A DNA stretch of 64,000 bases from Haliotis rubra (GCF_003918875.1 NW_025767078.1:682001-746000); one strand, 5' to 3'. Counted from the first letter of the stretch, positions 276 through 14,659 are shown. The notes: generated by a model from the letters alone, not told the origin. Translations and numbers: made by a program.

Positions 276-305
276 GATGACAACAAAACAATTAGTTTGC
301 CAAAG
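276..305 (+). CDS. Probable septin N-terminal micro-exon (DDNKTISLPK)
   Basis: ttattttcag|GATGAC...CCAAAG|gtgaga; 30 nt, no stop, phase 0-0, in frame with the exon starting at 2835, which itself follows an acceptor (ttgcag). Confidence 0.55.
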
Positions 306-2834: not shown

Positions 2835-2964
2835 ATGCCAACCGTACAGACTCAGAACTTGAGGAATCTCAACTTGACAGGTCATGTTGGGTTCGACAGC
2901 CTGCCAGATCAGCTGGTCAACAAGTCGGTGTCTCAAGGCTTCTGTTTCAACATTCTCTGTGTTG
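2835..2964 (+). CDS. Septin exon (MPTVQ...FCFNILCV)
   Basis: gtttgcag| acceptor, G|gtaaga donor; conserved [16 protein letters not shown]. Confidence 0.95.
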
Positions 2965-5900
2965 GTAAGATCATACAGTTTTCTTAAAGCGCCTCAATTT
3001 ACAGCCTATTAAAGCTACCTCTAGAAGTAAAAGCGTGGCACCAAAAAGATATTACAAAGCCATTGCAAAACTCTATGACGTAATTTGTGAAATCTTTTGA
3101 GATACACCAGCAAAACAATGCCATGTGACGTCATCCTGGCAGCAGGGTTGGTGCTGTCATCGAGCATAACCTCCTTTCAATGATCTGTTATCTCTACAAA
3201 CCTGTGAAGGTCCGGGTTAGAATATTGGCCTTCAGTTACCCATGCTTGTCGTCAGAGGCGACTAACGTGATCGGGTGGTCAGGCTTGCTGACTTGGTTGA
3301 CACATGTCATCGGTTCTCAATTGTGCAGATCGATGCTCATCCTGTTGATCACTGGATTGTCTGGTCCAGACTCAATTATTTACAGACCGCCGTCATATAA
3401 CTGGAATATTGCTGAGTGGCAGCGTAAAACTAAACTCACTCACTATTATCTCTACAGACATAGGTCTTGCAGTATATAAGAATGCACTTTGGTATGTATT
3501 ACAGCTGTGATGTTAAACTAGTGACCTTACTGGAGGAGGAAAGATAAATCATGTTTACTGCATTGTTTCTCACAGCTCCAAATAAGGCAAGTCCTCTATT
3601 TGTGGAAGCCATGGTGGCTGAGCGGGTTAGGCTGTCTTTGTGTGCTGGTGATTATGTGCCTGACTCTAAGGGTGGGGGTTCGAATCCCGGATGGTACTCA
3701 ACCCAACAAAAGTACTATAATCTGTACTTTACTAAGAAAGTGTAATCCCAAATATAACATATGTTACATTTGACCACTTTCTAAATGGCACTGTGTATTC
3801 ATATCCTCTGTCTCAGTGCAGACAACTAGTACAGTGAACAATTCTCTCATGCAGCTGATCCCCACATGGGTACAATATGTGAAGTCCATTTCTGGTGTCC
3901 CCTGCCATGATATTGCTGGAATATTGCTAAAAGCAGCATAAAACTAAACTCACTCACTCACCCACTCATACAGCTGATTGTTTTCCAAAATGATCTAACG
4001 ATGGGTTACTGTTTTGCATTGAATAATCAAAAATGGTAAAAGTCCAATAAAGTGTTGTGATGCTATTTGTCCCTAACAAAATCACTTATTTCCTTTCTAG
4101 GTGAAACGGGAATTGGCAAATCAACGATGATGGATACGTTGTTCAACACCAGCTTTGATTCCACTCCCAGTTCTCATGATCTGCCAGGAGTAAAACTCAA
4201 GGCTCATACATACGGTAATGTTGTGCAGATCGATGATCATGCTGTTGATCACTGGATTGTCTGGTCCAGACTTGATTATTTACAGCCCGCTGCCATATAG
4301 CTGGAATATTGCTGAGTGCGGTGCAAAACTAAGCTCACTCACTCACTCACATACGGTGATGTTGGAACAGTAACAACAGTGCTTCAGAAGGCAGTATCAT
4401 TTGAACTTTAGTATTACATGCTTTTGAAAGACTGCAGTTGTTAGACAATTGTTTTGTCAGCAAAAGACAAAAACGATTTCCTATTAATATTTGGAAAATT
4501 TATTTTAAGATCACAAATTATAGCTGGTCATAATTATGGATGAATAAATGAGGGAATATTTCATTTTTAACAAATTATGATGTATTAATTATTAATCTGT
4601 TTGATGTATTTGCAATCTGTTATCTGAAGACTTTCTATAATTTAGTATCACATTATTAAAAATTGAAGTTAAGATGAACGTTTTATAAAATTTTATCTGT
4701 ATACAATATTGATGCAAGAGTATCTATTCCTTTAATTTCCTTATTGAATATTTCCATAAAACTGCAACACATATCCAGGTTTCACTCGATTTGTAAAGTG
4801 CTCAGGATAAACCATGGCCTTTCAAAAGTGCTTGATTCTGCCATTTTAACAGTGCTGGAAATTTGTAGACAGTTCTTGAACAGTGCTGGAATGTAAATAA
4901 AATTGGTAATATATCAACAATCGAGTTTAAATGTGTTGTTTACTTCCTGTTGCTTACAACATGAATAGAGAGACTTTGGTCGAATTTGGTTTATTTCCTT
5001 AATTCCTTTGCACATTGTGTTACTTATATACTCCCCTACTTTATTTGTCATGAGCAACTATATTTTAGTGTGAAAATCTCAAAAAGTGTAGATCTATGCA
5101 GTATCTGGTATTGTGCAGTAACACAAGCTGTACAGTGATGCTTCACTAGATCTTCATTATGTATAACAGTGGTCCTTGAAAGTAAATGTAAAATATGCTT
5201 GAATTGAAAGATCTGCGTTAACCATGATATACCATTCACACTTGATAACACATAACTGGATTTGGCTGGCTGTAAGATGTGTGATGGACGCTTAATTATC
5301 TTATTTAGAATAAAAGCAAGATCTTTCTGGGGGGCAGTGGGGTAGTCCATTTGTAAAAGTGTTCGCTCGTCACGACTGAGACCCAGGTTCATTCCCTACA
5401 TGGGTACAATATGTGAAGCCCATTTCTGGTGTCCCTGCCGTGATATTGCTGGAATATTGCTAAAAGCAGTGTCTCACTCACTCACTCACTAACCCACACA
5501 TTGACTCACTCATTCACTTTTACATAAACATGAACAGATATAGATTGCTATTTAAGTGTTAAATTGTACATTCAATGTCTCATGTGTTGATACTTGCAGA
5601 TCTACAGGAAAGCGGTGTTCGACTCAAGTTGACCGTTGTCGACTCGGTTGGATATGGCGACCAGATAAACAAGGAGGAAAGGTACGCGTGGTTCATCATG
5701 TTTTCTCATCCCATGTTTCAATATTTCAGAGCTACAGGAGAAGAATGTGTGTTTAAAACTGACACTGGTAGACTCGGTGGGCTTCGGGGACCAAATAAAC
5801 AAAGAGGATAGGTGAGATCACGTAGACGGGTGTTGCTTCTAGCTTCTGACCACTAGTGCTTCTTCATACTGTACTCTCATCTCTTGTGACCGTACCTTCA

Positions 5901-8900
5901 GTACACTGTGTGGCCTTGGACATGTGGAGGTGGTTTGATTCTTGTTTTAATTTTTCACATATTTATGAATGGTTTAGGTGTGTTTGATGTTGTGAATATT
6001 ATCCTCTCTGTGGTGGAACTACTGTTTTTGTGTGTTGTTTGTTTTGTTGTGTTTGTAGTTCGAAGGGTGGATGTATTTTATCTACCAGTATCGTCTGTGG
6101 TAAGTGATGTATTAGAATGAAGGGGTTGATTTTGTGAACACTGTTTTCATCAGCAATACATTTTGTCATTTTCTGACATCGTCAACACTTTAAGGCTTGC
6201 ATACAATACACCCATCCTCGATAATCTCCAGGGTATACATTCCGATAAATGTCCACTAATACCCTGGATGCAATTATCTGGCCTGATAATTGTATTACTT
6301 CCCTTTGTTCGCTCCGCCTTCTCACAGTAGCCAATCTGACAAGCCGTTACAACTGAGCTCGCCAGTGTCACCAAAGATGGCGGCCGCAGCCGCGAAGGTT
6401 TGATCACTGTGTAACTTGGATTTAGGAAAAAATCATACAGACAAATTGACAGGTCTGAAACCGTAAAAAAGAACATATGCAAGAACTCCTGCTACCTCTT
6501 GACATTACTGTTTACTGAAGAAGTGGAAGAGAGTTATGATAGAAGCCTTGTGATTGGTACGTTCAACTTCCCCGCGGAGACACCTGATTGGATAAGAAGC
6601 CTGCAAAGGGAGGTAAGAAATTGATCAGGCCGAGCAGCAGATGCATCCAGGGTACTAGTGGAGATTTATCGGAACGTATACCTTGGGGTAATTGAGCATG
6701 CAATACACCTCGCTCCACAATCTTCCATTTATATGTATATTGGTTGTAACAGTGAAGCATGGCTAGTTTTTGTAACCTATTGAGGTGAGGAAATGTGTAA
6801 CTTCTGGGATTCAACGAGGACCTACTCCATACAACGAGGATCTACTCCATAATAATGCCACCATTGCCCATGATTAAGCTATGAGACAGCCACAAGGCCA
6901 TGATGTGTGCTGTCAAATAACATTGCCTTTCCCGTGATGAAAGCTGATTGTTCATTGGTCACAGTGCTTCCAGGTTACCCTCTTTCTGGGATCAGGAACG
7001 GCTTGTTTCATTGGTTAAAAATAGCAACTACAATGAATAGCAGTTGTATGTATATTTAAGACATGATATACTGTAGATACGTTTCATAGGATATGTTTTT
7101 TAGTTTGGTCGAAATCTTGTTTCTCTTTCTTTCACCTTTAGTTATGATCAGTGTTAATATTGTGTTCATTGTAGGTAATATCATTTTGCCTTGAGGATCA
7201 GAGTCCCAGATAAGCTGCTTATCCGGGTTAAATATGCATAGAAAATTTCCAATTACGCATTGAACAAATAATTGTTGCGTACCAATTACGCATTTATAAT
7301 GTTAGATACGCAAAAAATTTAAAACAAATGTGTACGGAATATATTTATAAAAATCGTTTGCATAATGAAAAAGACATCGATTGCTATCAAGTTGTACTGT
7401 TAGTATAGGACAAGTGTTGTATTGTCAGTATAGGATGAGTGATTTTTTATGAAATCATTTCCATTATAGTAAAGTTGGTTTTGATTAGGTATGACATAAG
7501 GCAGAACATACCTGCTTAGTAAACTTACTCAATGACATATACTTCGGTGTGTAAAATGACTGAAATACGCACATATTTGAAAGTAGTGGGTAATGGAAAA
7601 TGAAATACCCACTCAACATTCATAATACCCACTCCAAACAAATACAGTGGGTACAGTACCCACATTAGCTAAATCTTATCTGGAGCTCTGGAGGATGGGG
7701 AACCTCTTGTTTAGACACTACTGTTCTCTGAGTTGTGTATCTTAGACATGCCAGAATTCAGTGGTAGTGGGTTCAGATCCCAGTTGTGCTGTGGTTTGTC
7801 AGCACCAAACATGTGCTCATCAATGTAGTAAAGTGGTAAACATCTAGGATCTGCATCCCCTCAGGCTTTCCTCCCACGACAGATGACACACCATGAAATG
7901 CGGTTCAGAGCCAGCCTAACCTACTCATGTTGCCTTGGACCTCCATTAGCTGGCTTGCCATGCTTTTCCCCTTAATGCCAACAGTATAATGTAATCATGT
8001 GGTCAGTTTTTAAGATATTTTCAGATTTCATTGGATATGAACAACATTGATTGACCAAATTCACTGCAGATATGTTTTTCAGTCATGTTATTAGTGCACA
8101 GAAAATATCAGCTTTGGAGTTTCTTTTTATAAATTGTCTTCCACTGTTGAATATTTGAATTATCCATTCTTATTCTTCTGTTTGGATCAGTAGCATATCT
8201 GATATTGAATAATACTTACTGTTTTTTCATACATATATCTTTAGCATGATAACATGAATATATCACACTGCACAGATCTGGTGTGTATTGCACCTTCATT
8301 ACCCATGTATACCAGGTTCTCCGCACCAGTCAGTGATCACTTGACAAGGGACACGTTTAAGTACAAAACTGCTCATCGTTGCGTGTCCTAGATATGTATG
8401 TCTGTCAAGACATCCAAGTGTCATTGTAACACCTTGTTAATTTACATAGTCCACATTTCCTGGTAGGGGTGGTGGGGTAGCCCAGTGGTTAACGCATTTG
8501 CTTGTCAAGCAGGGGTGGAAATAACTATAAAATTGCTAGTGTACTCTGGTACAGTGGCGATAAAATCACTTGCCTTGATAAGCCCTATAATTTTCTTGTT
8601 GATTTTTTAAATAAACCATAATTAACATTGGAAAGTCAACTGGACACGGTACAGTGTGATAACAAATTTGCTTGCCCAACAGAAAAAACACTGGACTCGG
8701 TGTCCAACGCATATTTCCTCATGTCACCCATTTGTGGTGGCCCCGCCAACTACTGTAAAACCCAAAGTTTGGGACTCCTCATTTCCCAGTTACTGACAAA
8801 GTGTGTCCTGTGTCAGGTGATCAGCAACAGATAGGATCGTGGGAGGTTTCATGGTCTGGAATATGGACTTCTGTTTAGATGTACAGTTGTATGTCAGACA

Positions 8901-11900
8901 TGTGTACAGTACAGTTCCTGTGTGTATTTAACACTAGATGTTGGTGGACGGAAGTAGTGACAATAATTTGTAGCTGTTTAACATTTCTATCATTTCAAAA
9001 TTCTTATTATTCTTTTCATATTATCATTTCTTAGATGTTATTATTATTTAGAAGTTATTTAAATCATTTTAGCTGATCCTAGTAATTTTAGTTAGTTTTT
9101 ATCAAATATTATGTCAGATTGCGGTGATTTTGCATTTCTTACCAAAGGTTACTTTGTTCTTTGTAAACCTGATGGAGACCCTGATCAGGAAAGGCCTCCA
9201 TCACTCTAATGAAAGACATGAGTTGACTTAATTGTGGTCAGATTCTGAGACTTGGTTGAATGTCATAATTGGCTGAGTGATTCATGAAAGTCTGTCACAG
9301 ACTGTCCGAGATTGTATTTCTTGTCAGAACAACATATCAAATAAATCTTGCATACATGTTACAATTATCATTCTAACGCATATTCCTTTCCAGGAGACTT
9401 GCAGCAGATATTATCTTCATTATTCAAACTGATATGTCTAATGTGACTGTTTTATCATCATTTCCTTTTGCTCCACAAAACAGAAGTTTCAAGTTATGTA
9501 GTGAAGTGGGTGTGCAGCATTTGCAGGATGTTTGCACCCCTCATATGAAATAGTGAACCATTACCAGTACCCTCTATCACAATATCAGTGTTGGTGCAAA
9601 TCATGTGCGATCGTCTTCTGCAATTCTGACCCATGAAGATCTGGGTTATGATTGGTCTTCAGCAACCCATGCTTGTTGTAAAAGGTGACTAACTGGATAG
9701 GGTGATGGGCTTGCTGACATGGTTGACACATGTCACCGTATCCTAATTGCATAGATCGATGCTCAAACTGTTGATCACTGGATTGTCTGGTCCAGACTCA
9801 ATTATTTACAGACCGCTGCCATATAGCTGGAATATTGCTCAGTGCCGCGTAAAAATAAACTCACTCACTCACTCTGCAATTCTGCAACTGTACCCCTGCT
9901 TCCTGTCTCAACACAGTTTATCCTTACAAGCCTAATTGATAGGCATGGTTAAGATATCTTTCAGGAATAAATCCCTCAAGCGAATGGTAAGATGCAGTCA
10001 TTGTGAGGGTCATGTTGCACCAGTGCAAACACATGTGGTCCTGGTTGATACTGACGGGAACATATTCCATAAAGGGAGATAATTGTTGTTTCCAGCTGGA
10101 AGTCCATCGTAGACTACATCGATACCAAATTTGATGCATACCTCCAGGAGGAACTGAAGATCAAACGCATGCTCCACAGTTACCATGACAACCGCATTCA
10201 TGCTTGTCTCTACTTCATTGCTCCAACAGGACACTCGTGAGTATCCCTATGTTTGTCAACTCTCTCAATACCATCGATACACAGGACAGGTATCCCTGGA
10301 AAACTAAGAGTCTCAATACACAGGCAATATTGTGGGAGCAGTATTTTCCTAGTGGGCAGCAGTATTCTGGAAGTAGGTTTCTAAGATTATTTTAGTAGCA
10401 GTTTTCATAAGAAGCAGTATTCTGGGAGCAGCTTTCCTAGTCTGCAGTAATCTGGGAGCAGCTTTCCTAGTCTGCAGTAATCTGGGAGCAGCTTTCCTAG
10501 TCTGCAGTATTCTGGGAGCAGCTTTCCCAGTGGGCAGTATTCTGGGGCAGCAGTGGCTTTCCCTAGGGGCAGTATTCTGGGGAGCAGCAGTATTCCAGGG
10601 CTTTCCCAGTGGGCAGTATTCTGGGAGCAGTTTGCTGGGAGCAGCTTTCCCATGTGGGTGGGCAGTATTCTGGGAGCAGCTTTCCTAGTGGGCAGTATTC
10701 TGGGAGCAGCTTTCCTAGTGGGCAGTATTCTGGGAGCAGCTTTCCTAGTGGGCAGTATTCTAAGAGCAGCTTCCCTAGTTGGCAGCATTCTTTTCCTAGT
10801 GGGCAGTATTCTAGAGGGGGCGGTATTCTGGGGAGCTTTCCTAGTCTGCAGTATTCTGGGAGCAGCTTTCTAGTCTGTGGGCAGTATTCTGGGAGCAGCT
10901 TTCCCAGGGGGCAGTATTCTGGGAGCAGCTTTCCCAGTGGGCAGTATTCTGGGAGCAGCTTTGGGCAGTATTCTGGGAGCAGCTTGCTAGGGCAGTATTC
11001 TGGGAGCAGCTTCCCAGGGCAGTATTCTGGGGAGCAGCTTTCCCAGTGGGCAGTATTCTGGGAGCAGCTTTCCTAGTGGGCAGTATTCTGGGAGCAGCTT
11101 TCCTAGTCTGCAGTATTCTGGGAGCAGCTTTCCTAGTGGGCAGTATTCTGGGAGCAGCTTTCCCAGTGGGCAGTATTCTGGGAGCAGCTTTCCTTGTGGG
11201 CAGTATTCTGGGAGCAGCTTTCCCAGGGGCAGTATTCTGGGAGCAGCTTTCCTTGTGGGCAGTATTCTGGGAGCAGCTTTCCTTGTGGGCAGTTTTCTAA
11301 GAGCAGTTTCCTAGTGGGCAGTATTCTGAGGCAATTTTCCTAGTGATCAGTGTTCTGGAAGTTTTCTTTGTGAAGATTATTCTAGGAGGAGGGGCGGTAG
11401 GGTAGCCTAGTGGTTAAAGCGTTCGCTCGTCACACTGAAGACCTGGGCTAGATTCCCCACATGGGTACAATGTGTGAAGCCCATTTCTGGTGTACCCACC
11501 ATGATATTGCTGGAATGTTGCTAAAAGTGGCATAAAACTAAACTCACTCACTCACCCAGTGCTGTCTGTATTCATGACATTATTTTGACACACTTGGTTT
11601 CCCTTCAGGCTTAAAGCGCTAGATCTGGTCACAATGAAGAAGCTAGATAGCAAGGTCAACATCGTACCTGTTATCGCCAAAGCTGATACCATTACCAAGA
11701 CCGAGCTCCACAAGTTCAAGGCAAAGGTAAGATTAAGAAAACGTATTGTCAGATGTTAACTGAGTGAAGTTAGTTTTTAAATGACCCACATTCTTGGTAA
11801 TTGGCCCCAAAATAGGGATTTCTTAGAGTATCTGATTTTTAATTAATTTCATGGTATTTCAGCATGTATTCATTGCATTGATGTAAATCTATGGTACATT

Positions 11901-14659
11901 TGTATTACTGAGATGACAACATGCTATTTTCAGAGAAATGGTTTGCAGTCCAATAAAGTTTCATTGTATTGCGATGTATATAGTATGACCAGAAACGTGT
12001 GGAATACACAATGCCATTTAGAAAGTGGTCAAATGTAACACATGTAATATTTTGGATTACACTTTATCAGTGTGCTGGTGAGTAGGTGCCTGACTCTGAT
12101 GGTGTGGGTTCGAATTCTGAAATGAACTCAACCCAATAGAAAATACTAGAATCTGTACTTTACTGAGAAAGTGGAATCCCAAGTATACCATATGTTAGAA
12201 ACATGTGGTTCTACTGGAAATCCTGACGTTTTCTGTGGTTATTTCTTGAGTGTAGCCTAGCTGAGGTGGTCCTGTATGTTGCAGATTATGAGTGAGCTGA
12301 TGGCCAATGGAGTACAGATCTACCAGTTCCCCACTGATGACGAGACAGTAGCTGAGAACAATGCTTCTATGAATGTAAGGATTGAAATAATATAATAAAC
12401 TTAGTGGGTAAAGGTATATTGTATATTTTAAATATTGGATACACTTCAATTGATCTAATCATGAGAATAATCAATCACGATACTGCATTCTGTTTTTTGA
12501 CCTTGGAGTGAGTAAGCACAGAGTTGTCTTTAGATTTACTTAATTAAGATGTATCTAAGTTATTCTATTGGGTGCATCTTCTCCTCTGCAGAGTCACCTC
12601 CCCTTTGCTGTGGTTGGCAGCAATGATGAAGTGAAGATCGGAAACAAGATGGTGAAGGCAAGACAGTATCCTTGGGGGACAGTGCAAGGTAGGTTGCCTA
12701 CTTCATGGAAGCTGGAAAATTCTTTGTTCACATCACAATCTTCATCAGTGAAAGACCAATTCCTAGACTTGATGGCAGTGGAGTAGCCAAGTGATTAAAG
12801 CATTCGCTCGTCATGTCGACAGCCCGGGTTTGATTCCCCACATTTGTACAATGTATGAAGCCCATTTCTGGTGTCCCCCGCTGTGATATTGCTGGAATAT
12901 TGCTAAATGTGGCATAAAAATGAACTCACTCACTCGCCCTAGATTTTATTAAAGTGTTTTATGTATGGGGCTGGATCTGGAACATAGAAAATATGCTGAT
13001 CATTACTGGAGGTTGTTACACAAATTGGATGGTTGTGTCAATATACCACAGATACGCAACTACCAGTATCACGAGTGGAAGGAACTGACTTTGTATTTGA
13101 CATATGTGTCTGTGTGTCGTCGGCGCTAAGTCAGGCTAGGTAAAGTCATGGAGGTGAGGCAGAAGGCTTCTACCACATTTAAAGTTGCATGACTTGGTTG
13201 ATACGATTGTCTGGTCCAGACTGAATTATTTACGGACAACCATCCCTTAAACTGCAGTATTGCAAACGAATGTTTAACATTTTTAAGACTTTCTTTCATC
13301 AGATCACCTCAAACATTACTGGGTTGATGTGCTTTGTTTTATGTAAAGTATTATTTTTTGACGTGTGGAGAGACGATATTTATGTTGTGCTTTGTACCTT
13401 TCAGTTGAAAATGAAAACCACTGCGACTTTGTGAAACTTCGCGAAATGTTGATCAGAACAAATATGGAGGACCTAAGGGAGACAACTCATAAGCGTCATT
13501 TCGAGCTGTACCGCAGACATAAACTGGAAGACATGGGATTTTCAGACAGTGACGCAAAGAGGTGAGAAAATTAAACATTTGTTTTACACTCCACGAAAAG
13601 AATGAAACGTTTGTAACTAGTTGTAAACTTTCGAGAGATACATAAGGATCCGTCTGATATTCTGTATTCATATATTTGGTGATGCTGCCCCAGTCAGCCT
13701 GATGTGTTGTTCGCCGAGATACTGACATGGTGTTTGTCCCCAGTCTGTCGGAGACATATGAGCTGAAGCGCCAGCAACATATCAGCGACCTGCAGAAGAA
13801 GGAGGAGGAGATGAGGCAGACGTTTGTCATCCGAGTCAAGGAGAAGGAGGCTGAGCTCAAGGAGGCAGAGAAGGAGGTAAGCGGAGGGTGTAGCCAGCAC
13901 CAGTCCTGTGGAATGAGATAGAAATGAGACATTTGTCTGTACCTTGGAAAATATGTTCCGGACATTTGCAATAAAAATCGGTCAAATTTTCAAGTTGAAC
14001 ACTATATTAATTATAACAATGATACTGTTATGTGAAACTGATAAAACAATTCCCCATATGCACCCTTAGAAAAGTGTGAATTCTGCTCATAGTGCTAGAG
14101 ACATCATTAAATGTTGCCTGAGAACTACTGGCAAACAAGGATAAGTTGAGCACCGACCTGACAGTTGACCCGTATTAGCATGTATGAGTGCCGCCCACTG
14201 GCGCTTACCATTGTGTGTGAAATGGGCCCCAGGTTTTCTGCGATCAAGTGTAGTGCTACACTGACCACCTGAGAGTCTTATGAGCAAGGCGTGTGCAGCT
14301 ACGCGCAGAATCAATTTCATCATCATGCACTGCACGTTCACTAGCCTACATCTGCTCTACCTTTCACAACCAAATGGGTTTGCTCATTGCCGTGCCCCGC
14401 TACTTCTCGTAAACGCGTTCTCTGCACCTGTCCAACTTATCCTTGTTTGCCAGTAAGTGGTGTCCAGTCATTGACTACAGTAAACATCATGTCCTTTCAG
14501 CTCCATGCTCGCTTTGACTCATTGAAGAAGCAGCACGCAGATGAAAAGAAGAAACTAGAGGATCGCAAGAAACAGTTAGACGATGAGATGAATGTTCTCC
14601 AACAGAAGAAGGCTCAATACCAAGCAAACCAATCCACCATGGGCAAGAAGAAGAAGTAA
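2835..14659 (+). CDS. Septin, SEPT6/8/10/11 group (Drosophila Sep2-like); spliced CDS join(2835-2964,4101-4214,[5600-5681 or 5730-5811],10096-10236,11609-11726,12285-12374,12592-12688,13405-13561,13744-13876,14501-14659), 406 aa from the ATG at 2835
   Basis: All introns are GT-AG, phases are consistent and the frame stays open (1221 nt). Motifs: [17 protein letters not shown]1 [10 protein letters not shown]3 DSVG(Y/F)GD, G4 AKAD, septin unique element [24 protein letters not shown]-terminal coiled coil. Confidence 0.96.
3200..3445 (+). mobile_element. SINE-like family B (~245 bp, no tRNA head)
   Basis: TSD ttatctctaca; (ctca)n tail. Other copies ~4224-4348+, 9629-9872+, 25178-25430+, 26305-26543-, 28317-28562+, 30880-31093-, 52190-52425-, 58338-58542-, 60441-60650+. 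Confidence 0.85.
3608..3790 (+). mobile_element. tRNA-like SINE family D (widely spaced A and B boxes)
   Basis: tggctgagcgg...ggttcgaatccc; related copies ~12012-12195, 23035-23165 (-), 60335-60712 (-). Confidence 0.7.
4101..4214 (+). CDS. Septin exon, P-loop G1 (GETGIGKST)
   Basis: ctttctag| acceptor, G|gtaatg donor, phase 1-1. Confidence 0.95.
4224..4348 (+). mobile_element. 5'-truncated family B element
   Basis: 3' half of family B, 16-bp TSD with one mismatch. Confidence 0.85.
5600..5681 (+). CDS. Septin G3 exon, variant A ([28 protein letters not shown])
   Basis: cttgcag| acceptor, AG|gtacgc donor, 82 nt, phase 1-2. Confidence 0.9.
5730..5811 (+). CDS. Septin G3 exon, variant B ([28 protein letters not shown]); putative mutually exclusive with variant A
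   Basis: tatttcag| acceptor, AG|gtgaga donor, 82 nt, same phases as variant A, 21/28 aa identical. Confidence 0.88.
6213..6700. mobile_element. Same Mutator-like MITE family, copy 2
   Basis: Homologous to 658-1172; TSD caatacacc at 6204-6212 and 6701-6709. Confidence 0.85.
7199..7690. mobile_element. Non-autonomous TIR element, unclassified
   Basis: Termini cagagtcccagataag / cttatctggagctctg; flanking direct repeat gaggat. Confidence 0.65.
9629..9872 (+). mobile_element. Family B element, full length
   Basis: TSD tctgcaattctg at 9617-9628 and 9873-9884. Confidence 0.85.
10096..10236 (+). CDS. Septin exon (WKSIVDYID...[11 protein letters not shown])
   Basis: tttccag| acceptor, |gtgagt donor, phase 2-2; not in the ORF track but clearly septin. 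Confidence 0.95.
10320..11390. repeat. 30-bp minisatellite (gggcagtattctgggagcagctttcctagt)n, ~35 units, in a septin intron
   Basis: Direct tandem periodicity, degenerate at both edges. Confidence 0.95.
11391..11556 (+). mobile_element. SINE family A
   Basis: A/B boxes and (ctca)n tail. Confidence 0.85.
11609..11726 (+). CDS. Septin exon with G4 ([27 protein letters not shown])
   Basis: cccttcag| acceptor, AAG|gtaaga donor. Confidence 0.95.
12285..12374 (+). CDS. Septin exon ([20 protein letters not shown]...)
   Basis: ttgcag| acceptor, |gtaagg donor, 90 nt. Confidence 0.95.
12592..12688 (+). CDS. Septin exon ([10 protein letters not shown]...[10 protein letters not shown])
   Basis: ctctgcag| acceptor, G|gtaggt donor. 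Confidence 0.95.
13405..13561 (+). CDS. Septin exon ([24 protein letters not shown]...)
   Basis: ctttcag| acceptor, AG|gtgaga donor. Confidence 0.95.
13744..13876 (+). CDS. Septin exon, coiled coil (LSETYE...KEAEKE)
   Basis: ccccag| acceptor, GAG|gtaagc donor. Confidence 0.95.
14128..14453. mobile_element. Tc1/mariner-type MITE
   Basis: TIR ctggcaaacaaggataagttg, TA on both flanks. Confidence 0.8.
14501..14659 (+). CDS. Septin last coding exon ([10 protein letters not shown]...MGKKKK*)
   Basis: ctttcag| acceptor, coiled coil, TAA at 14657-14659. Confidence 0.92.

What the first reader, a model, noticed from the sequence alone, without database searches (positions are those of the whole stretch)
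5600..5811. Tandem mutually exclusive exons encoding the septin G3/switch-II segment
Seen: two 82-nt exons with the same phases (1-2) and good splice sites. They differ at 7 of 28 aa (D/E, S/K, G/N, R/C, V/L, Y/F, E/D) and at many synonymous sites. Only 48 nt separate them, with a branch-like ctcat ~25 nt from the first donor. Including both or skipping both shifts the frame. Established: very short donor-to-branch spacing enforces mutual exclusion, and switch II contributes to the septin G-interface. Inference: one invertebrate SEPT6-group gene makes two G-domain isoforms, possibly standing in for the vertebrate SEPT6/8/10/11/14 paralog diversity. Exon B is missed by the ORF track.
Basis: partly seen in the sequence, partly recalled or inferred. 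Interest (0 to 1): 0.85.

Follow-up and report, generated by a model that had tools for sequence, protein, structure and literature searches.

The report
Alternative exon pair in abalone septin
The abalone's only SEPT6-type septin gene has two old tandem copies of one 82-base exon and uses one or the other, giving two proteins that differ in seven residues around the GTP-binding "switch II"; the pair is real and shared by snails, but both forms are already in RefSeq gene models.

Summary
Window 5600-5681 (A) and 5730-5811 (B) are two 82-nt, same-phase exons with AG/GT borders. They are 70% identical in DNA, differ at 7 of 28 residues, and lie 48 nt apart.

The window is Haliotis rubra. My exon model reproduces RefSeq septin-11-like isoforms X1 (A) and X2 (B) exactly. 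Contigs from four runs that must be cDNA, since they carry these spliced joints (the tool only guessed RNA), join A to the next exon (10096) in all four. They join B to it in three, under two organism labels. Including both exons or neither shifts the frame and gives an early stop.

A/B isoform pairs that differ only in this segment are annotated in four Haliotis species, Littorina saxatilis and Babylonia areolata. Synonymous sites between A and B are saturated while replacement changes are few, so both copies are old and constrained. About 20 other unnamed invertebrate genomic loci have one copy.

The proposed steric block fits H. rubra only, because the intervening intron is 139 and 166 nt in the two other genomes. 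Frame-shift surveillance is the shared safeguard. Functional divergence of the isoforms is untested.

This is a new member of a known kind. It is already in RefSeq models, and I found no paper on it.

The parts
276..305 (+). 30-nt cassette micro-exon (DDNKTISLPK) of the same septin gene. An identical second copy lies 1268 nt upstream, outside the window.
   Evidence: RefSeq X1 and X2 contain two copies, X3 one and X4 none.
2835..2964 (+). Constitutive exon ([43 protein letters not shown], then the first base of the Gly codon).
   Evidence: The exon model reproduces P0308 and P0306 exactly.
4101..4214 (+). Upstream constitutive exon holding the P-loop (GETGIGKST) and switch I. It ends with G, the first base of the split codon (GAT = Asp with exon A, GAG = Glu with exon B). 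Donor is ACG|gtaatg.
5600..5681 (+). Exon 3A, 82 nt, phase 1-2, encoding (D)[26 protein letters not shown](S).
   Evidence: Junction 5681->10096 (GT..AG) appears in RNA contigs of all four runs, and 4214->5600 in X5. RefSeq X1, X3 and X4 use it.
5682..5729 (+). 48-nt intron between the two alternative exons. Candidate branch site CTCAT at 5705-5709 (A at 5708, 27 nt from the donor and 21 nt from the acceptor).
   Evidence: The branch point is not mapped.
5730..5811 (+). Exon 3B, 82 nt, phase 1-2, encoding (E)[26 protein letters not shown](S).
   Evidence: Junction 5811->10096 (GT..AG) appears in RNA contigs of X1, X2 and X5. RefSeq X2 (P0306) reads [13 protein letters not shown]...NKED-SWKSIV and is reproduced exactly by the model.
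10096..10236 (+). Downstream constitutive exon (rest of switch II, alpha2, beta4). It begins with C, which completes the Ser codon AG|C.
11609..14659 (+). Remaining six coding exons: 11609-11726, 12285-12374, 12592-12688, 13405-13561, 13744-13876 and 14501-14659 (the last includes the stop).

Best explanation
The window holds the single SEPT6-group septin gene of the blacklip abalone, Haliotis rubra (RefSeq 'septin-11-like').

Origin: an old tandem duplication of one 82-nt exon produced exons 3A and 3B.

Splicing: the mRNA carries one or the other. The upstream exon (ending at 4214) is spliced to either A or B, and either one is spliced to 10096.

Products: two proteins identical except for seven residues in a 28-residue segment. 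That segment forms the end of beta2, the beta2-beta3 turn, strand beta3, the G3 motif (DSVG) and the first half of switch II. Switch II is a part of the septin G-interface.

What keeps the choice exclusive: each exon is 3n+1 nt, so double inclusion or double skipping puts a stop codon more than 700 nt before the last junction. Such mRNAs are non-productive and are probably removed by nonsense-mediated decay (inferred). In H. rubra the 48-nt intervening intron probably also prevents A-to-B splicing sterically (inferred, about even odds).

Age: the duplication predates the split between abalones (Vetigastropoda) and periwinkle or whelk-type snails (Caenogastropoda).

Constraint: both copies have been kept under purifying selection, which implies that each isoform has a use of its own. 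The likeliest uses are tissue- or stage-specific septin filaments with slightly different G-interface or nucleotide-state behaviour (inferred, untested).
For: Sequence anatomy.

Identity of the gene: the best solved relative is human Septin-6 (E 4.5e-199). The SEPT6-group characteristic P-loop Thr (GETG) and switch-I His are present (alignment, with 10.1101/2020.07.08.161463).

Species and annotation: P0268, P0308 and P0306 are XP_046579438, XP_046579436 and XP_046579437 of Haliotis rubra. My exon model from the window reproduces X1 with A and X2 with B exactly.

RNA: GT..AG junctions 5681->10096 occur in four runs and 5811->10096 in three, spanning two organism labels and two studies. The relative (X5) carries one synonymous change in each exon and no replacement.

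Conservation: A/B isoform pairs differ only in this segment in H. rubra, H. rufescens, H. cracherodii, H. asinina, Littorina saxatilis and Babylonia areolata. Genomic 82+82 nt tandems are present in L001 and in L014-L016.

Selection: A versus B has pS 0.83 (saturated) against pN 0.15. Orthologous comparisons of B (pS 0.39-0.79, pN 0.07-0.13) and of A (pS 0.65-0.81, pN 0.02-0.23) all show pN well below pS.

Tree: B exons form one clade (support 80/90). A recent within-abalone duplication is disfavoured (p-AU 0.021).

Frame: stops lie 736 and 719 nt upstream of the last junction.

Mechanism context: PMC4165533 covers the 3n+1 exon and NMD mechanism and the too-short-intron mechanism. PMC7969005 gives the roughly 50-nt 5'ss-to-branch-point threshold.
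Against: The junction 4214->5730 was not among the 15 joints that one search printed (250 were not shown).

Absence of the 5681->5730 junction could not be shown. Contigs show presence, not absence.

Contig depth cannot quantify usage. Run X4 showed no exon B.

The steric argument lacks a mapped branch point and a known minimal intron size for abalone. The intervening intron is 139 and 166 nt in the two other genomes.

The seven differences are of the same kind as differences between orthologues of other animals, so a biochemical difference between the isoforms is not demonstrated.

The AlphaFold model was poor (mean pLDDT 47). The exon tree rests on only 82 columns.
Confidence: 0.9

Rival explanations
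1. Exon B is an unused or decaying duplicate (a pseudo-exon). The B-containing transcripts would be splicing noise or non-productive A+B forms.
For: Run X4 shows no B junction. The 4214->5730 joint was not among those listed.
Against: B is spliced precisely to 10096 in three runs. B is intact, 82 nt and in phase in three genomes and in six annotated species. Its orthologues show pN 0.07-0.13 against pS 0.39-0.79, which a neutral pseudo-exon would not. The constraint holds in the reading frame that exists only when A is skipped.
Confidence: 0.04
2. The pair is mutually exclusive, but the two protein forms are functionally equivalent. On this view the duplication persists because the two exons carry different splicing or expression control (subfunctionalised regulation), not different biochemistry.
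For: The seven differences are conservative or lie at positions that vary among orthologues elsewhere. The core residues are identical in both: D of G3, the GD, Asx(Sw2) and the Lys under the beta-bridge (PMC8640212; 10.1101/2020.07.08.161463).
Against: B-type exons keep type-specific residues (E1, K5, N6, no Arg at position 8) from abalone to whelk. Abalone A keeps S5, Y19 and E27 in all four Haliotis species. Type-specific conservation over this time span suggests selection on the protein differences themselves.
Confidence: 0.3
3. Mutual exclusion is enforced mainly by steric hindrance from the 48-nt intron.
For: The intron is 48 nt, so any branch point is less than 48 nt from the donor. CTCAT has its A 27 nt from the donor. 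The vertebrate threshold is about 50 nt (PMC7969005). In C. elegans, introns shorter than the species minimum are not excised (PMC4165533).
Against: The homologous intron is 139 nt (L001) and 166 nt (L014), with good branch-like sites (CTGAT, CTAAC) more than 100 nt from the donor. The pair has therefore been maintained without a steric block. The exons are 3n+1, the class that in C. elegans relies on NMD rather than on short introns (PMC4165533). The minimal spliceable intron in Haliotis is unknown.
Confidence: 0.4

Closest known systems
Mutually exclusive exon pairs that arose by tandem exon duplication (alpha-tropomyosin exons 2/3, FGFR2 IIIb/IIIc, CaV1.2 exons 8/8a, C. elegans let-2 and lev-11)
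   Same: The exons are adjacent, homologous, of identical length and phase, and each has its own AG/GT. One is chosen per mRNA. The length is 3n+1, so errors shift the frame. In H. rubra the intervening intron is very short.
   Different: The host gene is a septin, and the swapped module is the beta3/G3/switch II part of a GTPase domain. Regulators, tissue pattern and branch points are unknown here.
Vertebrate SEPT6-group paralogues (SEPT6, 8, 10, 11, 14)
   Same: They belong to the same septin group (best solved hit is Septin-6). They provide alternative subunits for the same position in the septin oligomer.
   Different: Vertebrates obtain this diversity from separate genes that differ along their whole length. 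The vertebrate-like loci seen here have the P-loop and G3 segments fused in one exon. In gastropods, one gene varies only 28 residues by splicing.
Known septin splice isoforms (SEPT9, SEPT4)
   Same: One septin gene gives several proteins.
   Different: The described isoforms differ in the disordered N-terminal extension (PMC8640212). Here the difference lies inside the G domain.
SmSEPT10 of Schistosoma mansoni (PDB 4KV9/4KVA), a SEPT6-group septin with beta3 strand slippage
   Same: It is a close relative (E 5e-175). The strand that slips and the switch II it controls (PMC8640212) are the very segment encoded by exons A and B.
   Different: Slippage is a nucleotide-dependent conformational change in one protein. 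It is now regarded as a property of non-physiological interfaces. No alternative exon is known there.

Membership tests
Mutually exclusive exon pair from tandem exon duplication | Neighbouring exons of the same gene with equal or similar length and conserved reading-frame phase | tested here: met
   Both exons are 82 nt and phase 1-2, 48 nt apart. The same holds in L001 and L014.
Mutually exclusive exon pair from tandem exon duplication | Sequence homology between the exons | tested here: met
   70% DNA identity and 75% protein identity.
Mutually exclusive exon pair from tandem exon duplication | Each exon is spliced on its own to the flanking constitutive exons in mRNA | tested here: met
   Seen in RNA contigs: A->10096 in four runs, B->10096 in three runs, 4214->A in one run. 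The junction 4214->B was not among the joints printed. It is present in RefSeq X2, which the window model reproduces exactly.
Mutually exclusive exon pair from tandem exon duplication | mRNAs with both exons or with neither are absent or rare | tested here: inconclusive
   No 5681->5730 or 4214->10096 joint appears among the 15 listed, but 250 joints were not shown and contigs cannot prove absence. Both products would be out of frame.
SEPT6-group septin | Septin-type G domain followed by a C-terminal coiled coil | tested here: met
   PF00735 matches exon by exon. There is a full-length alignment to human Septin-6 2QAG_B, E 4.5e-199.
SEPT6-group septin | Group-characteristic residues: Thr in the P-loop (GETG) and His in switch I (Rosa et al., 10.1101/2020.07.08.161463) | tested here: met
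   GETGIGKST and SSHDLPG align with GETGLGKST and ATHTQPG of Septin-6.
SEPT6-group septin | No GTPase activity; the subunit stays GTP-bound | not testable with these tools
   This needs biochemistry.
Sterically enforced exclusion (alpha-tropomyosin type) | The distance from 5' splice site to branch point in the intervening intron is below the minimum for spliceosome assembly | tested here: inconclusive
   In H. rubra the whole intron is 48 nt, below the roughly 50-nt vertebrate threshold (PMC7969005). The branch point and the species' minimal intron are unknown. In L001 and L014 the intron is 139 and 166 nt, so the feature is not met there.
NMD-policed exclusion | Exon length is not a multiple of three, so double inclusion or skipping creates a premature stop far upstream of the last junction | tested here: met
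   The exons are 82 nt. Stops lie 736 and 719 nt upstream of the last junction. Actual decay was not tested.
Docking-site/selector RNA structure (Dscam type) | Conserved intronic complementary elements that pair competitively | tested here: not met
   Only chance-level 10-14 nt inverted repeats were found. The fold of 5560-5860 is no more stable than its shuffles (z = 0.92).

The most novel reading that the evidence does not exclude
Gastropods have kept, since before abalones and caenogastropods diverged, a splice-selectable beta3/switch-II module in their only SEPT6-group septin. The two modules would give septin oligomers with different G-interface or nucleotide-state properties. That would make this the first case of septin filament diversity generated inside the G domain by splicing rather than by paralogues.
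Probability: 0.3. Interest if true: 0.6.

Novelty: new member of a known kind. Interest (0 to 1): 0.42.

Why it matters
Septin specialists explain which subunit sits where in a filament largely through the switch regions at the G-interface. The isoform diversity they know of lies in the disordered N-terminal parts (PMC8640212).

This gene is a natural experiment. Two versions of strand beta3, G3 and the start of switch II sit in an otherwise identical protein, and both have been kept under selection in abalones, periwinkles and whelks. Comparing the two recombinant forms would test directly how much these residues tune partner choice or filament behaviour.

For genome annotation the case is ordinary. 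RefSeq already lists both isoforms, so the value lies in recognising what the isoforms are, how old the pair is, and that the short intron is not the conserved mechanism.

Tried and rejected
- **Protein search with the open frame around exon B:** no candidates. Short fragments carrying exon B are not in the collection.
- **Representative search with exon 13407-13559:** it returned mostly single-exon ORF fragments and vertebrate proteins. These served only as stepping stones.
- **Look-ups of P0003, P0004, P0005 and P0008:** the contigs did not reach the G3 exons.
- **Look-up of the H. rufescens B isoform:** not on record, so I could not check whether the 48-nt intron is conserved within Haliotis.
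- **Alignments A1 and A3:** the short exon pieces were misaligned, so I discarded both. A4 was clean and I used it.
- **AlphaFold2 on the B isoform with a 23-row alignment:** mean pLDDT 47. I ran no fold search.
- **Complex prediction:** not used, because no partner septin sequence was available by reference.
- **RNA structure as an exclusion mechanism:** no signal.
- **A third exon copy in the window:** none.
- **Vertebrate proteins:** representatives (for example P0108 and P0116) came back from searches. I did not pursue them and took no contig for human.

Full report
**1. What is in the sequence**

- Exon A is 5600-5681 and exon B is 5730-5811. Both are 82 nt, both follow an AG and both precede a GT.
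- They are separated by a 48-nt intron (5682-5729) that holds CTCAT at 5705-5709.
- The upstream exon ends at G4214 and the downstream exon starts at C10096.
- With those bases the exons read [28 protein letters not shown] and [28 protein letters not shown].
- DNA identity is 57/82 and protein identity 21/28. Twelve of the 21 shared residues use different codons.
- Nei-Gojobori counts give pS 0.83 (saturated) and pN 0.15, Fisher p about 1e-7.
- No third copy exists in the window.

**2. Which gene and which organism**

ORFs and tblastn with septin representatives show a SEPT6-type septin on the + strand. A profile search with a clean alignment of window and relative exon pieces (A4) returned 'septin-11-like isoform X3 [Haliotis rubra]' (P0268).

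The members of its cluster include H. rubra X1 (P0308) and X2 (P0306). I built an exon model from the window:
- 276-305
- 2835-2964
- 4101-4214
- A or B
- 10096-10236
- 11609-11726
- 12285-12374
- 12592-12688
- 13405-13561
- 13744-13876
- 14501-14659

This model translates exactly to residues 19-434 of X1 with exon A and of X2 with exon B. The window is therefore H. rubra, and RefSeq already carries both isoforms.

The protein is a SEPT6-group member.
- Its best solved relative is human Septin-6 (E 4.5e-199), followed by CiSeptin-6 and the Schistosoma septin 4KV9.
- It has the group's characteristic P-loop Thr and switch-I His (10.1101/2020.07.08.161463).
- The other septin loci of the genome are at most 54% identical exon for exon, so this is the only SEPT6-group gene.

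**3. RNA evidence**

The run search found four runs whose share of words (0.11-0.12) equals the exonic share of the query, plus one run of a relative. Laying contigs of X1, X2, X4 (organism A) and X5 (organism B) on 4150-10149 gave these results.
- GT..AG joints 5681->10096 appear in all four runs.
- GT..AG joints 5811->10096 appear in X1, X2 and X5.
- A joint 4214->5600 appears in X5.
- These 4.3-4.4 kb skips show that the runs are cDNA.
- X5 differs from the window by one synonymous change in each exon (5640 C>T, 5776 G>T).

The joints 4214->5730 and 5681->5730 were not among the 15 printed, and 250 were not shown. I therefore saw neither the upstream junction of B nor proof that A-B joining is absent. 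The first is supplied by RefSeq X2. The second remains open.

Double inclusion or double skipping gives a stop 736 or 719 nt before the last junction.

**4. Conservation**

RefSeq isoform pairs that differ only inside this 28-residue segment exist in six species: H. rubra, H. rufescens, H. cracherodii, H. asinina, Littorina saxatilis and Babylonia areolata. For Littorina the pair is also present as submitter records KAK7096753 and KAK7096754.

Genomic DNA of two further unnamed animals shows the same tandem arrangement.

| Locus | Exon A | Exon B | Intron between |
|---|---|---|---|
| L001 | 1372-1453 | 1593-1674 | 139 nt |
| L014-L016 | 6563-6644 | 6811-6892 | 166 nt |

L001's exons are identical to those of Littorina and Babylonia.

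B-type exons are well conserved: E-L-[QR]-E-K-N-V-[CSL], 83-85% DNA identity between abalone and L001, and between L001 and L014. Caenogastropod A exons are nearly identical to each other. Abalone A is more divergent.

Every orthologous comparison has pN far below pS.

In a maximum-likelihood tree of the 82-nt exons, the B exons form a clade (80/90). Holding abalone A and B together as sisters is disfavoured (p-AU 0.021). A-type monophyly is not rejected (p 0.10). The duplication therefore predates the abalone-caenogastropod split. By general knowledge that split is early Palaeozoic. With 82 columns this is indicative, not decisive.

Elsewhere only one copy was found.
- Six unnamed long contigs (L009-L013, L018) have a single 82-nt exon with the same phases.
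- None of the 80 metagenome or metatranscriptome loci has two copies. This includes about 15 genomic loci with introns, at least six of which have both flanking exons present.
- Vertebrate-like loci have the P-loop and G3 segments fused in one exon.

The taxa of these contigs are unknown to me. I can say that the pair is not general among invertebrates, but I cannot say where in molluscs it begins.

**5. How exclusion works**

Two mechanisms from the literature apply (PMC4165533): frame-shift plus nonsense-mediated decay for exons that are not 3n, and steric interference when the intervening intron is too short.
- The frame condition is met in all three genomes.
- The steric condition is met only in H. 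rubra. Its intron is 48 nt against a vertebrate 5'ss-to-branch-point threshold of about 50 nt (PMC7969005).
- In L001 and L014 the intron is 139 and 166 nt, with branch-like CTGAT and CTAAC near the 3' end.
- There is no sign of competing RNA structures.

I conclude that frame surveillance, together with regulated splice-site choice, is the conserved safeguard. The short intron is a lineage-specific addition at best.

**6. What the swap changes**

By homology to solved septins, the exon encodes the end of beta2, the turn, beta3, the G3 motif and the first nine residues of switch II. The strand order in the AlphaFold model agrees, but that model is low in confidence.

Switch II contributes about 300 square angstroms to the SEPT2-SEPT6/8/11 G-interface and forms a beta-bridge across it (10.1101/2020.07.08.161463). 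Beta3 is the strand that slips in the Schistosoma SEPT6-group septin (PMC8640212).

The seven differences fall as follows:
- in the turn (S/K, G/N);
- in beta3 (R/C, V/L);
- at the aromatic residue after G3 (Y/F), which I take to be the conserved switch II aromatic (Phe129 of SEPT3 in that paper) — this equivalence is my own inference;
- at both ends of the segment (D/E, E/D).

The core residues are identical in both exons. Similar substitutions occur among orthologues of other animals. A biochemical difference between the isoforms is therefore plausible but unproven.

**7. Novelty**

Mutually exclusive exons from tandem duplication are a textbook kind of alternative splicing. Both isoforms are already in RefSeq for six gastropods.

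Three full-text searches found no paper that describes a septin G-domain exon pair. The main structural review lists only N-terminal septin isoforms.

I file this as a new member of a known kind, of moderate interest to septin biologists and ordinary for annotation.

Noticed in passing
window 276-305, and G000:C2188:681008-681037 (L020 4008-4037, outside the window): The 30-nt in-frame micro-exon DDNKTISLPK of the same gene occurs twice, 1268 nt apart. At least 25 nt of upstream flank and 14 nt of downstream flank are identical, which points to a recent segmental duplication. RefSeq isoforms carry two, one or no copies. H. asinina isoforms have one (DDNKTISLPE). H. rufescens has a different 10-residue cassette (EATVTINLTQ).
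   Followed up: partly
P0298, P0300, P0299 (H. rufescens and H. cracherodii exon A): In these two abalones exon A reads DSVAYGD. The glycine of the G3 DxxG motif is replaced by alanine, while exon B keeps DTVGFGD. This suggests relaxed or altered nucleotide handling in the A form of that lineage.
   Followed up: no
It shares ESG and GYG with abalone exon A and groups with it in the tree (92/89). That could mean the species kept only an A-like copy, or it could be convergence.
   Followed up: partly
window 10414-11358: A 30-nt minisatellite of about 31 copies (78% matches) sits in the intron after exon 10096-10236. It creates long spurious ORFs on both strands (GSILGAAF... repeats).
   Followed up: partly
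window 3282-3418, 4182-4350, 5393-5498, 9651-9876: Copies of a short interspersed repeat ending in (CTCA)n lie in the septin introns, one of them directly after the donor at 4214. RNA-run contigs pile up on them at depths of 1e4 to 1e5, so the element family is abundantly transcribed.
   Followed up: no
L068-L070, L081, L092, L093: In vertebrate-like SEPT6-group loci the P-loop segment and the G3 segment are contiguous in one exon. The phase-1 intron that precedes the 82-nt exon in the invertebrate loci is absent there.
   Followed up: no
L021 296-649: A metatranscriptome contig whose P-loop exon is 97% identical to abalone has a distinct G3 segment ([27 protein letters not shown]). About seven extra residues precede the next exon's sequence. 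The animal is unidentified and mollusc-like.
   Followed up: no
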